Counted from the stretch's first letter, positions 35,610 to 43,476 are shown. The stretch is 64,000 nucleotides of DNA from Setoptus koraiensis (GCA_048013815.1 CM106585.1:16616001-16680000); one strand, 5' to 3'. Made by a program: numbers and translations. Notes: a model not told the origin generated them from the letters alone.

Positions 35610-36719
35610 TGGCCCGTCGCGCGTAATTTGTCGTATTTGTCGTATTCATTGTTCATTGCGATTCGCAGCTCGTCGTGCGCAATTGTCACATAATGTTTTC
35701 GCGTCGCGCCTAACGCAACTTGTGGCTGCCCCCCACAGGCGCGTTTGTTCTATCGCGGGCACGGTGGCGCGCTGCGGTTGCGTCTTGCAGCGTCTCGCAT
35801 TGTGACCGGCATTGCGTCTCGCGTTGGAGCCGCTTGCGTCTTGCGAGTCGCTCGCGTCTCGGGACTCACGAGTTGTGAGTCACGAGTTGTGAGTCCGGGA
35901 GGGGGGCGGCAGCGGCACTCTCACTTGCTGGCAGCGAGTGGCTGCCCAACAGGCCGCGTTGAGTCGTGCGCGCCGCTTGCGAACTCTAGCCACCGTGCAC
36001 ATGTAACAATAGCGCCAATTCGGCAAATTCGCCAAATTGTGCAACATTGTGCGTTAACACATGCGCCACAAGTAGCGGCGGCAGCGTGTTGCATTGCGAT
36101 CATTTGTCGCTCTCAACTTGAGAGTCTCAAGTCAGCGACCGTCGCTGCTATCGTTACTGTTACTTGCTGTGCCTGCATACTAACACCAATACTAACACCA
36201 ATACTAACACCAATACTAATACCAATACTAATACTATGATAGTAAGCATAGAGAGCGTAACACTTTTTCGAGAATGTCGACGCACGGACCAGCTAGCTAT
36301 CGAGAGACTATCGCACGATAATGACGCGTTGCGTGACGGCGCTGAGTCGGCCAAAGGTCGGCCGTGTGGCGACAACTTGCGTGGCCGCACTGCCGCCGGA
36401 GTCGCATAACCGGCGCTGCCGCGTAATCGCTGCTCGCATCAACGTAAACAACCTAAACCATCTTGCCTACAACCAACAAAATCTTGCCTTACAACCAACA
36501 AAATCTTGCCTTACGACCAACAAAATCTTGCAAATAATCGCCAATTATCGCCAATTTTCACCAATTATCTCACCAGTTATCGCAAGCTATCTCAGGCTAT
36601 CACACGAGCTATCACAAGCCGTCGCAAGCCGTCACAAGCGGATTACTGCAAGTTGTCGCGCGGATCGCTCAATCAAATTATTACAAATTATTACAAATCA
36701 ACCAAACCATTCGTCGGCC

Positions 36720-39700
36720 ATGTTGTTGTTGATCGCGATAACAATGCTGGCCTGGTGCACGGCCGCTTGCCGCTCAGATCCACAGCAGCCGCAGCACCAC
36801 CATCACCACCAGTATCAGGCGGAGGAGGACGCCATGACACAGCACAACAGCAAGCTAGAGCTAAAGTCTTGCTACAAACACAACAATCAGCCCCAATTGT
36901 GCCTGTCCACATTCTACAACATTGCGTACGGGCGCACGCTTGACGTTACAAACACTTGTGGCATGCCAGACAAGGGCAAACAGGAATTCTTCACCACAGA
37001 CACCAATACGCTGGACAATTGCGATGCCACACACGATAAATATGCCCATCTACCTAGGCACATGACAGACTCAAACGACAAAACATGGTGGCAAAGCGAA
37101 ACAATGGCCGACGGTATCAAACAGGTCAATCTCACCATGAACTTGAAGAAACGCTTTGTTATATCGTACATATTTCTCAAATTCAAATCGCCTAGACCCG
37201 AGAGCATGGCCATCTACAAACAGAACAAGGTCGGGGGGCCGTGGCTGCCCTACAGGTACTACAGCACGCTATGTCCGCAACAGTATAAAACGAGGGATCT
37301 CAGAAGGATTGTTAACACGACCAAAAACGAAGATCTCGCCGTACCGCTCTGCTCCTCGGACGCTGGCTCAATTTCGCCTCTCACGGGGGGCGAGATACTG
37401 TTCTCGCCGCTCAAAGAGAGACCAGGAAGAAATCCCGACCACATACCCGTGCTAAGAGTGAGTTGCTGCAACCATAATCGTAAACAATAACAACAATCAA
37501 ACTCGCTACTGCTGCTGCTGCTGCAACGTCTTTGATCATTATCGACTTATCTTATCAAATCAAATTATGCATTCTTGTTTTCCGCTCCTGCATCTAACCT
37601 CTCCAATCTGATTATCATCCCGATCATCATCATCCCGATCGTCCTCATCACCACCACCATCATCGTCATCACCACGATCATCATCGTGACCATTGTCATC
37701 GTGATCATCATCACCACTATCTTCCCTATCATCATGCTAGGAATTTATTGGCGCGGCTGGCATCCGCATATCCCTTGATGGGATGAACACCTTCGGTGAT
37801 GAAATTGTTCATGGAAACATCGATATTAAACAAAAATATTTTTATGCAATTATTGACATATCTGTTGGGGGATAGTGAGTATTATATATCATTGAATCTT
37901 GGTAGTTTGTCTTGTCAATTTGAAACTTTTAACTTCTTATCAATTCTGATCAACTCCTATCTGAACCATATCAGTTGTGACTGCAATGGACATGCGTCGC
38001 ACTGTAATCCTATTGAGCCAGGCTCGGAAGAGTTTAAGTGTTCGTGCGAGCATAACACTTGGGGAGAAGATTGTCAACTATGTGCACCATTCTACCAGGA
38101 CGCCCCCTGGGGACCAGGTACTGAGTTGAACGCAAATGATTGTAAAAGTAAGTAAAGTTCCGATATCAAAACTAAGAAGTGGGTGGCTGAAGGCACACCT
38201 TCTCAATTCTATTATAACGGGGGTTAGATATGCGAGATGTATGCACTAGAATACTACAGGGCATCGTAGCCTTCTTCGAACAAACGCACACAAGCTAAAA
38301 CAACTTTTTCCAAGGGTCTCTAGTGGATCAAGTTAGTTTAATGTCGCCCACGCAATATCGAATTCAGCGATGGGTAGCTCGAGAAACACTTGAGGGGAAA
38401 AAGCGGTCTTATCCCTGTTACTTCTAAATAGGGGATGAACATATGCTTACTTTTCTCAAGTCAATCTCCTACCTGATGAGCTAACTACGCGTACAATGGA
38501 TCCTGAGTCTCGTCTACTATTCGTTACGAAAATACTGACACACAAGGCAAAGGTTGCTTCTGATATCTGATAGTATTTTGGAACTTGGGAATTTGCATTG
38601 GACATTCAGAAATTTGGATCGTTGCATAATTTTTTGTTTCAATTTGAATCCAGAGCCATAAAGGAACCTATTATTATCACTTAAGCTCGCTTCAGGTAAC
38701 AGGTGGCCACGACGATCACATTCGCACAATTGGACGCCGGACTTGATTTTGGACTATAATCAATTTAATCTATGGAGATAAAATATGACAATATTATCTT
38801 GACTGTTTAAACCGACACCCCTAATAGCCTATGGGATAAATCTTCAGATACTTGTTAGAAAAACTTAAGGATTTATTCGATACTCCTATTTGAAGAAACA
38901 ACCTTTGCAAAAATGTCATATTGTCTAAAAAGGACTGTGCTCTTCACGCTAGTATACTTCTATTGTCTTGCAGATCTTCTCTCATACCTGACCTCTGCTC
39001 AAGATGTGCCTGGCAAGATGTGGACCGGGTCAAAATGGGAAGGTGATTTTCGATTGATTTTTTTATTTGATATCTTGACACGGCGAGATGGTGACTAAGG
39101 CGGCCTAATTACGCAATATCCTGTTCTAACCCAATTTTTCTTTACTCTTTATCTCTCCTACGAACGATAAAATTTAGTTTGCAACTGTAACGATAAGTCA
39201 GATAAATGCGTCTTTGATGCAGAATTATTCAGGACCACCGGACATGGAGGGCGCTGCTTAGAATGTCGCGACAACACAGATGGTCCTCACTGTGAGAAGT
39301 GTAAACAAGGATACTATTTTGATAAGACTACAAAACAGTGCCAATTGTGTGGCTGCGACGCGTTAGGAACTGAGACATCTTCAAGTGGTTTCTCAATATT
39401 TAGCTTTGGTGCCTCCCCATCCAACAATACTCTACCAGACTGTGATGTAATAACCGGTCAATGCAAATGTAAGCCACGTGTTGGCGGGAGAACTTGTGAC
39501 CGATGCATGGAGGGCTACTTTGGTGTTCATGATGGCTGTAAAAAATGTGACTGTGATCCGATTGGTTGCACTGAGAGTGTCTGTGATCCTTCAGACGGTC
39601 GCTGTCTTTGCAAGCCTGGTGTCACTGGAGAAAAATGCAATAAATGTATGGATTTGCATTATGGATTTTCTGCGAATGGCTGCTCCAAATGTGATTGTGA

Positions 39701-41627
39701 CACTGAAGGTTCACTTGCCTCACAGTGTGATGAGAATGGCCAGTGCCAATGCAAACCAAACTTGGAAGGATTAAAATGCGATCGGTGTAAAGAAAATATG
39801 CACAATAAACAAATTGGTTGCGAAGATTGCGGGCCTTGTTATCAAATTGTTCAATTGGGAGTGGAGCATCATCGAAAAATGTTGAAAAATCTTACCGACA
39901 TGATAAACAACATAGAGAACAGCCCTCAGACTATACAAGATCCAGAGTTCAATCGTCAACTGCTAGATCTAATAAACAAGGTTGATATTCTAGCTAGCCA
40001 AGCAGAGGTTGCTCAATCTGTCGAACTAAATTTATTAAGTCAGCTAGATAACCTAGCTCAACGGATAAAAAAAATCAGAGACTCTTCAGAAGTTGTCTCA
40101 AGACATCTTGATTCCACACGCCCAATGCTCGATGAAGCTAGGGATAATGTGACAACAGCCGAAAATATTCTGAAGAGAATTCAGGATGAGCTTCTCCGGG
40201 CCGGAAATCATATCCGTATAGATGGTCAAGCAGCAATATTAAAAGCCAATGAAAGATCTCAAAGATTGGGGGAACATTATAAGCATATTTCAGAAATGGC
40301 CAAACAATCGCGTGCTATAGCCGAGGATCATAGATCGCAGGCTGAGACCATTCTGTCATTAGCTAATCAAGCGCTAAGAAATTCTAGCGAGGCTTTCAAT
40401 CTCGCAAAAGATGCTGTGGTAACGCACGAAGCCCACGCAAAAAATATTCAGTTATTGAATGCTGCCCTAAAGGAGGCGGTTGAACTGATGGAAAGAACGC
40501 AGAAGATGTCGATTGAGTCGAATGCGCAAGCAAAGAAAGCTTATGAAGAAGCTCTAGCTCTATTCACGGCCATCAAGAACCTGGAACTTTCTCCATATGA
40601 CCTAGATAAACTTCGAAATGAAGCAAATGACCATCTCAAGAATGCAAGAAGACTCCAAACAGAGGTGGAAGAATTTTTGAAGAGGCATCGTCAACTGTTA
40701 GATTCTACTTTCATCACTATGCAAGAAATGAAAGACCTCCTGGAAGAAACCAGGCGGCAGCAGCAAATAACCGACAAACAATTGGCAGATATCGATAAAA
40801 CTATACAAGAGTCCAAGGCCGCTCTAGCATCCGGCGAGAAGATACTAAAAGATGGCATGGATACTCTCAAGGCATTGAAAGAATTCGACGTCCTAGTTGA
40901 AAGAAGTAGGCTTGAATCTGTTACTGCGTTGAAGATGATTCCCCAGATTAGAAAAATAATTTCCGACGCCGAGAACAAAACACGAGAAGCTGAAGGAAAG
41001 TTGGCTACAGCTCTCGAGGATGCAACGGACGCGAGGGACATCGCTCGCAATGCATTCGAGATTGCTAACAAAACTATAATTGATGCACAACAAATTCGAA
41101 GTCTTGCATCTGAACTCAAAGATAAATCTACTCAGCTCCGACAACAAACTAAAGAGTTGGCTGACAACGTCAATGCAACTGATGCAATGATGACACAGTA
41201 TGAAAATATAGCTAGAGTTGATGGTGAAATGTCTCAAAAAGTTCTTCGAGATGCTAATCAGGCCGCCAACTCAGCTCAAAATGCAACAGACACCGCCAGA
41301 TTTTTGCTAAATTTATTGGGACCATTACTCAAGTCTATCGATGAAATGGAGGGTATAAATCCCAAACAATTAGCGGATTTGGAATCTTTACTGGCAAATC
41401 TGAAGAAGATGTATGCTGATAGTGGCATCAGGAGCTGGCTGGACAAGGTACAAGATGACCTTGCGAAACAAAAATTAAAATTCAAAATGTATGAAGCCGA
41501 AATTGAATGGCTCAAAAATGAAGTGGCGAACATAAGGGAGATAAGAGACTCTTTGCCTGATAAATGTTTTAAAAGAGAACGCCTTGAAGTTGAAAGTGCT
41601 AATAGTAAACCTAGTGATTGGAATTAA
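36720..41627 (+). CDS. LanB2: Laminin gamma chain (LanB2/LAMC1-like), shortened, 1164 aa. Exons 36720-37457, 37741-37874, 37975-38147, 39178-41627
   Basis: Signal peptide; LN domain (TWWQS, RPESMAIYK, ISPLTGG, NTFGDE); gamma-type LE2 (FRTTGHGGRC); five LE repeats; coiled coil; LPDKCF tail. All three introns are GT-AG and the phases (0, 2, 1) join in frame (3495 nt total). Confidence 0.93.
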
Positions 41628-43476
41628 GCCTAATGAAATTAATCTGATGTGCCATCAATTTATCACCAGAAAGGGTATAATATTACATCAGCATAATTAT
41701 GTACTAGATTTCCAACTAAAATAAGATTTTAACTATTGCAACCCGAATGGGATAGAGCATTTACTAAATCGACTGCTTTGAACTGAGCGAATTGACATTA
41801 TAATTACTATTTTTATAATTATTTTAACAACAATAAAACACTTTTACTCGAAGATAATGAGAATCATAGGCCCACGTTAAGAAGAAGGGGTAATGTTTGT
41901 ATTGCGAGCTATTACCATGCGTGGGAGTAGTACATTGAATTTCATTGTATGAGAATATAACAATATGTTTGCTTCCTCGAAGAACTAGAAGCACACCAAA
42001 GAACGTGCACAACAGAGGCACCCCGTTAAGATGTCAGTGAGATAGTTAAAGAGCGCAAACTCGTCATACCGCCGTAACATTCCAGACCCCTCAGATCTAA
42101 ACTTAGAATATTGGATAGTCTGAGGCAGTGAGATAAACTGGATGATTTATAGAGCTACATTGAGGGTCCAAACACAAGGTGGGAAGTACAATGTGTTGTT
42201 GTAGCGCAGTTGTAGTTCAAAAGCTTAGTACACAATCTGCTAGAGTGTGAGTTATTAAAATGATGACACAAGCTAACCTCATAGATTGGGGCTTTTACTT
42301 TTCGTCTTTTTCCTACATTGATTAATTTTATTATAATATGCAGCCATATGAGGGATTCTTTCATATCGATTGGCGCATTACAGCCAATAGAATGCATCGA
42401 TCGCGTTCGGATAGCAACGGCGAAGTCCCACAATGAGAACAGTTTAGGTAGAGCCTCATCACTGGTCCATGACGAATGTGGTTCGGATGAGAGGGAAGAT
42501 ACCCTTTGTATTGTAGGTAAACAACTCATGAAGCTTCCCAATAGCTTTACAGATTAGTGTGCTCTATTGTGTATTCCCCAGATCATGCATACAATGTATT
42601 GCGAAGTTACATTACATTTTATGTAACTGCCATGTTGTTGATAGCAGGTACAACCAGCATAGTTGAGAACACAAGGTAAGAAATTCAAAGAGTGCAATAA
42701 AATTCTGTTGCTAGTTGACGTGCACCTTTATAACCGACATGGCTAATGTGTCAAAACACAACTGTTCCACATTGTGTGTGAGTGAGTGAGTGGCAAAAAT
42801 GTTGCAAATGCATTCGAGCATTTCGCCGCTGCAAAATAATCATCTTATGATATATATTTATTTGTTTATTTATCCATCTATTCCATCTATATCTTTGTCC
42901 GTCAAGATGATGGCGACCAGTAACAAGCATCATCCCAAATAAATGAATGCTTCCATAACGACGAATAGATGGATCTCAAGGATATGGAACACTCGACAGA
43001 GAGATCATACGTGCAGCAACATACACATTCCATCGAAAAATTAACCAGTAATTAGTATAGAGAAGAACAAAATTAAAATTATGCATGTTATGTTACAGCG
43101 TGTCAACATCATCTGAGGCCAGAGACGTGTATGTATCATCAAAATTAGATCGATTACAAGCAATATATAAATGGCATTCTGTTTAACCATGCCGGGTCTT
43201 GTGGCAACTAATACAGAAAATAGGATAAATAAATATTGAAATCCAATACATATCAATGGAAGTCAAGTGAAGTGCAATATTTATATCAAGTCATAAATAA
43301 GAAGAAATCGGCGAACAAAATTCTGTGAACTGGTACCATCTAATGGAGAAGACCTTCTCTGGAGAGATTTGTTGAATAGTTTTATATCAATTTAAAAAAT
43401 TTTGTTATATTATTGATTCCGTGAGCTTTAATCTAAGTAAGAATAGAAGAACATATCGTCGTTGACATTATTGATA

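What the first reader, a model, noticed from the sequence alone, without database searches (positions are those of the whole stretch)
39178..39830. Mini laminin gamma: no L4 domain and no nidogen-binding LE module, deleted within a single exon
Canonical gamma chains have LN, about 11 LE repeats with an inserted L4 (domain IV) globule, then the coiled coil (about 1600 aa). Here LN is followed by only five LEs. LE1-2 are N-terminal type, and the last three resemble LE9-11 and run into the CxxCY coiled-coil start. The junction (KQCQL|CGCDALG, near 39345) lies inside one continuous exon, so missed splicing cannot explain it. The missing 450 or so residues include the N[IV]DPNAV nidogen-binding loop. 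This predicts a short-armed, nidogen-independent basement-membrane network, which I am not aware of being described.
Basis: partly seen in the sequence, partly recalled or inferred. Interest (0 to 1): 0.8.

Follow-up and report, generated by a model that had tools for sequence, protein, structure and literature searches.

The report
Shortened laminin gamma chain in mites
This mite's laminin gamma chain, a core protein of the sheet under animal tissues, has lost the middle of its short arm including the nidogen docking site; related gall mites have lost the whole arm.

Summary
A four-exon gene (36720-41627, + strand) encodes a 1164-aa protein with a signal peptide, a gamma-type LN domain, five LE modules and a coiled coil of about 600 aa. 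It has no L4 (Laminin_B) domain and no nidogen-binding LE. LE2 to LE5 and the whole coiled coil lie in one exon (39178-41627).

- **Assembly:** a contig from an independent sequencing study spans the junction without gaps.
- **Conservation:** two related species (95% and 84% identity) have the same layout.
- **Selection:** dN/dS is 0.04-0.12 on the short arm.
- **Module mapping:** LE1-2 match canonical LE1-2. LE3-5 best match the last three canonical LEs, so LE3-8 plus L4 (about 450-500 aa) are gone.
- **Long arm:** it is intact, with the CxxC start, the C-terminal Cys and the integrin-critical Glu.
- **New here:** the sister clade has 38 sequence clusters, one named Aceria tosichella (Eriophyoidea). 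Its gamma is only a signal peptide, one LE and the coiled coil, with no LN at all.

Three things are unresolved: whether a canonical gamma paralog or a nidogen gene exists in this genome, and whether the gene is expressed (the RNA runs tried held no reads). This is a new variant of a known kind. The scan's notes, unchecked, also report a shortened alpha and beta chain in this genome.

The parts
36720..37457 (+). Exon 1: start codon, signal peptide and most of the gamma-type LN domain (aa 1-246)
   Evidence: Pfam Laminin_N 1.1e-42. Best solved-structure match is the laminin gamma-1 LN, 4AQT, at 1.7e-40. GTGAGT donor at 37458. dN/dS 0.08 against L002.
37741..37874 (+). Exon 2: end of the LN domain (aa 247-291)
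   Evidence: Pfam Laminin_N profile positions 192-233. AG acceptor at 37739-40 and GTGAGT donor at 37875. 82% identical in L002.
37975..38147 (+). Exon 3: LE1 (aa 292-349)
   Evidence: Pfam EGF_laminin and EGF_LMN_ATRN. Best match is canonical LE1, scores 151-183. dN/dS 0.12.
38148..39177 (+). Intron 3 (1030 bases), with no coding remnant of LE or L4
   Evidence: 14-22 stops in each frame. No tblastn hit to canonical L4 regions.
39180..39347 (+). LE2 (aa 350-405), canonical N-terminal type with the TGHGG motif
   Evidence: Scores 149-197 against canonical LE2, against 111 or less elsewhere.
39348..39545 (+). LE3 (aa 406-471), best match to the third-last canonical LE (LE9), with a conserved 28-residue loop a. 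Its 5' edge is the deletion junction.
   Evidence: Best hit 128-153 aa before the coiled coil in 7 of 10 canonical chains, by a modest margin. The junction and loop are kept in L002 and L007.
39546..39689 (+). LE4 (aa 472-519), matching canonical LE10, with one extra Cys (aa 479)
   Evidence: Best hit 90-98 aa before the coiled coil in 9 of 10 chains. The extra Cys is kept in L002 but not in L007.
39690..39827 (+). LE5 (aa 520-565), matching the last canonical LE (LE11)
   Evidence: It adjoins the CxxCxxCY start and scores 127-174 against the last LE. It is the only LE kept in the eriophyoid headless gammas.
39828..41627 (+). Coiled-coil long-arm part (aa 566-1164) and stop codon: CGPCY start, C-terminal Cys1145 (41565-41567) and Glu1152 (41586-41588)
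   Evidence: 30-37% identical over the full length to arthropod gamma-1. The C-terminus aligns to human gamma-1 chain 5XAU_C with Cys and Glu in register. dN/dS 0.016.

Best explanation
This is a real, selected orthologue of the laminin gamma chain in an eriophyoid-type mite. An in-frame loss has removed the middle of its short arm: canonical LE3-LE8 with the inserted L4 globule, about 450-500 residues. What is shown: the LN-LE1-2 head is joined through three LEs (canonical LE9-11) to an intact coiled coil. That coil keeps the CxxC start, the C-terminal Cys that links to beta, and the Glu needed for integrin binding. What is inferred: the chain still assembles with alpha and beta and still supports integrin binding. 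It can still offer an LN domain to a polymer node, on an arm roughly half as long. It cannot dock nidogen at the canonical gamma LEb3 site. The change belongs to a lineage-wide dismantling of the gamma short arm, because in the sister clade (Eriophyoidea, including Aceria tosichella) gamma is reduced to a signal peptide, one LE and the coiled coil.
For: Architecture and splice sites. Gamma identity: the LN matches gamma-1 at 1.7e-40, against beta-1 at 6e-10 and alpha-1 at 4e-9, and all named best hits are laminin gamma-1. LE mapping. Independent assembly. The same four exons occur in L002 (95% identity over exon 4) and the same exon 4 start and junction occur in L007 (84%). Purifying selection: dN/dS is 0.08 for LN, 0.12 for LE1, 0.04 for LE2-5 and 0.016 for the coiled coil, at dS about 0.9-1.2; against L007, pN/pS is about 0.1-0.15. 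C-terminal Cys and Glu are in register with human gamma-1. In the tree, the mini clade and 38 headless rows sit together, apart from canonical gammas, with SH-aLRT 100. In the headless genes a signal peptide runs straight into one LE; the upstream gene ends 440-860 bases away and no LN or LE remnant lies in 20 kb of flank. One headless protein is UniRef A0A6G1SF50, from Aceria tosichella, family Eriophyidae.
Against: There is no expression evidence. Two RNA runs offered under a related species label gave 0 reads, which is no test. I could not search the rest of this genome, so a canonical gamma paralog is not excluded. The LE3 assignment rests on modest score margins, and 2 of 10 comparisons are ambiguous. 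The C-terminal alignment to 5XAU is weak (E 0.015). An unchecked scan note says the beta chain of this genome lacks LN. If that is true, a three-chain polymer node could not form, and the role of the retained gamma LN would need another explanation.
Confidence: 0.8

Rival explanations
1. This is a lineage-specific short paralog that works beside a canonical full-length gamma, as vertebrate gamma-2 and beta-3 work beside gamma-1 and beta-1. On this reading the basement membrane of this mite is ordinary.
For: Vertebrates show that truncated chains can coexist with full ones: the beta-3 and gamma-2 hits of 1166-1190 aa. The mini plus headless clade sits on a long branch (0.72). I could not scan the genome.
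Against: Arthropods normally carry a single gamma gene (general knowledge). The scan's index for this genome lists only one alpha, one beta and this gamma, and describes the alpha and beta as shortened too (unchecked). The LN search of 1.84 billion representatives found no second gamma-type LN above 49% identity. The mid-length hits I scanned in Pfam were L4-bearing fragments of canonical chains or partial proteins, and the best full-length LN hit I traced comes from NCBI assembly GCA_013235015.1, not a mite run. The three canonical-type Logan hits whose run I looked up or noted (ERR338470, SRR18067430) came from runs other than those of the mini or headless genes.
Confidence: 0.15
2. This is an assembly or annotation artefact, from a collapse between LE repeats or from missed exons.
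For: LE repeats are similar to one another, and there is a 1-kb intron just upstream.
Against: A contig from an independent study spans 37704-41700 with no gap. Two other species carry the same junction. The junction is inside an open exon. The intron is full of stops and has no LE or L4 similarity.
Confidence: 0.02
3. This is a decaying or non-functional gene copy.
For: No RNA reads were found (which is no valid test).
Against: The frame is intact over 1164 codons. The splice sites are canonical. dN/dS is 0.016-0.12 across every domain at near-saturated dS.
Confidence: 0.02

Closest known systems
Canonical laminin gamma-1 (Drosophila LanB2, vertebrate LAMC1; about 1600 aa)
   Same: Gamma-type LN, LE1-2, the last three LEs, the CxxC start of the coiled coil, a coiled coil of about 600 aa, the C-terminal Cys and the integrin-critical Glu. 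It is the orthologue by tree.
   Different: It lacks LE3-LE8 and the L4 globule, including the nidogen-binding LE (gamma-1 LEb3, PMC11260871). It is 1164 aa rather than about 1600 aa.
Vertebrate laminin beta-3 (LN, about six LEs and a coiled coil; about 1170 aa)
   Same: It has nearly the same size and layout, an LN head on a short LE rod with no inserted globule (P0054, P0057 and P0059).
   Different: Beta-3 is a beta chain that coexists with full-length beta-1 and beta-2 and belongs to the non-polymerizing laminin-332. Here the LN and the coiled coil are of gamma type.
Vertebrate laminin gamma-2, and LN-less 'isoform X2' gamma-1 of insects
   Same: These are also truncated gamma short arms (P0046-P0052; P0020, P0021, P0023 and P0033).
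   Different: They lose the LN head but keep L4 and the LEb modules. The mite chain does the reverse.
Eriophyoid 'headless' gamma (for example UniRef A0A6G1SF50, Aceria tosichella, 687 aa)
   Same: It is the sister orthologue, about 52% identical over the last LE and the coiled coil, with the same C-terminal CFKRxRLE tail.
   Different: It has no LN and only one LE. The window's chain keeps LN and five LEs.
Dicyemids (secondary loss of basement-membrane genes)
   Same: A miniaturised, simplified bilaterian lineage in which laminin has been reduced (PMC6543705).
   Different: In dicyemids the LN-domain and collagen IV genes are reported absent altogether. In the mite a trimmed, selected gene persists.

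Membership tests
Laminin gamma chain | Gamma-type LN domain (ISPLTGG-type, closest to gamma-1 LN) | tested here: met
   4AQT and 8DMK chain G at 1.7e-40 and 7.9e-40, against beta-1 at 6e-10 and alpha-1 at 4e-9. Pfam Laminin_N.
Laminin gamma chain | Long coiled coil starting at CxxCxxCY, with a C-terminal Cys and Glu tail | tested here: met
   30-37% identity over 96-99% of exon 4 to arthropod gamma-1. Cys1145 and Glu1152 are in register with human gamma-1 5XAU_C, a weak match at E 0.015.
Laminin gamma chain | L4 (Laminin_B, domain IV) globule inserted in the LE rod | tested here: not met
   No PF00052 hit. No tblastn match to L4 regions anywhere in the window.
Laminin gamma chain | Nidogen-binding LE (gamma-1 LEb3, N-I/V-D-P-N-A-V loop) | tested here: not met
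   No N[IVL]DP motif. No query LE maps to the fourth-last canonical LE.
Laminin gamma chain | Orthology by descent (groups with gamma chains) | tested here: met
   All named hits are gamma chains, and the tree places the protein with the eriophyoid gamma next to arthropod gamma-1.
Laminin gamma chain | Forms a heterotrimer with alpha and beta and is deposited in basement membrane | not testable with these tools
   This needs biochemistry or imaging. The alpha and beta genes of this genome could not be read.
Laminin beta-3-like short chain | Beta-type LN and a beta-type coiled coil with the L-beta knob | tested here: not met
   The LN matches beta-1 only at 6e-10. No beta-specific Pfam families (PF21199, PF23219) hit exon 4.
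Netrin | LN, three LEs and a C-terminal NTR domain, with no coiled coil | tested here: not met
   There are five LEs followed by a 600-aa coiled coil and no NTR hit. Netrin LN matches are weaker than gamma-1.

The most novel reading that the evidence does not exclude
This short chain is the only gamma in the genome, and eriophyoid-type mites as a lineage have dismantled the laminin short arms. One branch keeps an LN head on a half-length arm with no nidogen site. The sister branch (Eriophyoidea proper) has no gamma short arm at all. These free-living bilaterians would then build, or do without, basement membranes that lack the canonical three-arm laminin polymer and the nidogen bridge.
Probability: 0.45. 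Interest if true: 0.8.

Novelty: new variant of a known kind. Interest (0 to 1): 0.64.

Why it matters
Laminin polymerisation through the three LN-tipped short arms, and the nidogen bridge from gamma LEb3 to collagen IV, are textbook steps of basement-membrane assembly (PMC11260871). Truncated chains are known only as extra isoforms beside full-length ones. A lineage whose gamma chain is trimmed, or in gall and rust mites reduced to one LE plus the coiled coil, while under strong purifying selection, would be a natural experiment. It could show which parts of the short arm are dispensable in a whole animal, and how small-bodied animals simplify their matrix. The retained parts are the LN-LE1-2 head, the coiled coil and the integrin Glu. 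They point to what selection still requires.

Tried and rejected
- **RNA evidence:** two poly-A or oligo-dT runs offered under a related species label gave 0 reads on 5.1 kb. That label probably does not denote this mite, so this is no test.
- **Run accessions in papers:** none found.
- **Synteny:** none of the neighbouring genes around the headless genes (L001) is found in the window.
- **Other mini-gammas:** I searched 1.84 billion representatives with the LN. The best hit is 49% identical. The ten hits I scanned in Pfam either carry Laminin_B or are partial.
- **Canonical paralog by run accession:** the run accessions of canonical-type Logan hits (ERR338470, SRR18067430) differ from those of the mini and headless genes. 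This is not decisive.
- **Beta-chain reading:** considered because LE2-5 align colinearly with beta-1 LE2-5 in 4AQS. Rejected because the LN, LE2 and the coiled coil are gamma-type.
- **Nidogen:** no nidogen query sequence was available by reference, so I did not search for nidogen.
- **Scan notes:** searches for nidogen, basement membrane and collagen gave nothing usable.
- The reads call used 5101 letters.

Full report
**Gene and architecture**

Translating the three + frames and reading the splice sites gives a four-exon gene: 36720-37457, 37741-37874, 37975-38147 and 39178-41627. Every intron is GT..AG, and the coding sequence is 3495 bases, or 1164 codons. Pfam finds Laminin_N across exons 1-2 (1.1e-42 and 2.5e-6) and Laminin EGF in exons 3 and 4. 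It finds no Laminin_B.

Cysteine spacing defines five LE modules (aa 292-565) directly before the CEDCGPCY start of a 600-aa coiled coil. Exon 4 holds LE2-LE5, the whole coiled coil and the stop codon.

**Not an artefact**

A contig of 8994 bases at depth 108, from a different study and organism label, covers 37704-41700 with two substitutions and no gap. A second independent run tiles the region. Intron 3 has 14-22 stops per frame. tblastn with seven canonical gamma chains finds no L4 or extra LE coding anywhere in the 64 kb.

**It is a gamma chain**

The LN matches mouse and human gamma-1 LN at 1.7e-40 (4AQT, 8DMK chain G). It matches beta-1 at 6e-10 and alpha-1 at 4e-9. Exon 4 is 30-37% identical over 96-99% of its length to arthropod laminin gamma-1.

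The C-terminus aligns with human gamma-1 in the integrin-binding E8 fragment (5XAU_C). The Cys (aa 1145) and the Glu seven residues later (aa 1152) are in register. That Glu is the one reported as required for integrin binding (Ido et al. 2007, as cited in PMC11260871). The match is weak, at E 0.015.

**Which LEs remain**

Each LE was scored against ten canonical gammas without prior segmentation.

| Query module | Best canonical match | Strength of the match |
|---|---|---|
| LE1 | canonical LE1 | scores 151-183, in the five chains that include LN |
| LE2 | canonical LE2 | scores 149-197, runner-up 111 or less |
| LE3 | third-last LE | 7 of 10 chains, modest margin |
| LE4 | second-last LE | 9 of 10 chains |
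| LE5 | last LE | 7 of 10 chains, and fixed by contiguity with the coiled coil |

The missing block is therefore canonical LE3-LE8 with L4, roughly 450-500 aa. The N[IV]DP loop of the nidogen-binding LE lies about 50 aa before the third-last LE in six canonical chains. It is absent here. PMC11260871 places nidogen G3 binding at gamma-1 LEb3.

**Conserved and selected**

L002 (run SRR33593474) has all four exons with the same layout, and its exon 4 is 95% identical. L007 (SRR18502803, 84% identical) has the same exon-4 acceptor, the same junction and the same enlarged loop in LE3.

Nei-Gojobori dN/dS against L002 is as follows, at dS about 0.9-1.2:

| Region | dN/dS |
|---|---|
| LN | 0.08 |
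| LE1 | 0.12 |
| LE2-5 | 0.04 |
| Coiled coil | 0.016 |

Against L007, synonymous sites are saturated and pN/pS is about 0.1-0.15.

**Relatives go further**

The next relatives are about 52% identical. They form 16 clusters, and 38 clusters of 617-721 aa with those added. All consist of a signal peptide, one LE (the homologue of LE5) and the coiled coil, with the same CFKRxRLE tail.

In two of their contigs the upstream gene ends 440 and 858 bases before the start codon. No LN or LE remnant lies within 20 kb.

One of these proteins is UniRef A0A6G1SF50, named 'Laminin subunit gamma-1', from Aceria tosichella (Eriophyidae, Eriophyoidea). Trees of the last LE plus the coiled coil put the mini clade (the window, P0001 and P0002) and the headless clade together. 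They are separated from canonical arthropod gammas with SH-aLRT 100, and each is a single group. It is not known whether the L4 deletion preceded the split or the two reductions were independent.

**How it most likely works**

- **Shown:** the chain has an LN-LE1-2 head, three LEs, and an intact coiled coil with its Cys and Glu.
- **Inferred from established laminin biology (PMC11260871):** the chain still trimerises and still supports integrin binding by the alpha LG domains. It can still present an LN domain, on an arm roughly half the usual length. It has no canonical nidogen docking site.

In the eriophyoid sister clade the gamma arm is absent, so the canonical alpha-beta-gamma LN node cannot form with that chain.

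**Open points**

- I could not search this genome for a second gamma, for nidogen, or for the alpha and beta chains.
- The scan's own unchecked notes report a beta chain without LN and a half-size alpha chain in this genome. If they are right, the reduction is system-wide. The selected gamma LN would then need a role other than the three-arm node.
- The LN search of 1.84 billion representatives gave no second gamma-type LN above 49% identity and no other mini-gamma among the hits I scanned.
- No expression data could be obtained.
- No paper on mite, eriophyoid or Aceria laminin was found. The nearest precedent for basement-membrane reduction in a simplified bilaterian is the dicyemids (PMC6543705).

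**Verdict**

The functional claim is plausible but untested. This is a new variant of a known kind. Its interest is raised by the more extreme sister form and lowered by the unresolved paralog question.

Noticed in passing
L001:10001-12019; L004:10001-12043; P0003-P0018, P0219-P0240: Eriophyoid mites, including Aceria tosichella (UniRef A0A6G1SF50), encode a 'headless' laminin gamma of about 680 aa. It consists of a signal peptide, a single LE and the coiled coil, with no LN domain. There are 38 clusters at 90% identity, all with this layout.
   Followed up: partly
window:43462-46452 (+): A single 996-aa ORF encodes a peptidylglycine alpha-amidating monooxygenase-like protein (a Cu2 monooxygenase domain plus an NHL/lyase part, by the Pfam labels of the L002 copy), with a C-terminal hydrophobic anchor. 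It lies just downstream of the laminin gene. The same neighbour is kept in L002 (7623-10622).
   Followed up: no
window:39366-39440 (LE3 loop a): LE3 carries a 28-residue loop between Cys2 and Cys3 (GTETSSSGFSIFSFGASPSNNTLPD), about 10 residues longer than in canonical LE9. It has an NNT sequon and is conserved in L002 and L007.
   Followed up: partly
window:39567-39569 (Cys479 in LE4): LE4 has an extra ninth cysteine. It is kept in the 95% relative (L002) but is Val in the 84% relative (L007), so there may be a free thiol in the short arm.
   Followed up: no
window:1-15000 against the rest: G+C is 55-63% over about 2-14 kb and 34-45% over most of the rest of the window. Intron 1 of the laminin gene (37560-37740) is a CAT/ATC-rich low-complexity run, and an (ACA)n microsatellite lies at about 36170-36240.
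   Followed up: no
P0020, P0021, P0023, P0033: Insect 'laminin gamma-1 isoform X2' proteins start with a signal peptide that runs straight into LE2. These are LN-less isoforms that keep L4, the opposite truncation to the mite chain.
   Followed up: no
runs X17, X20: RNA-seq runs listed under the same species label as some DNA holders (organism C) gave no read on 5.1 kb of this gene. That label may denote a host or a different organism.
   Followed up: no
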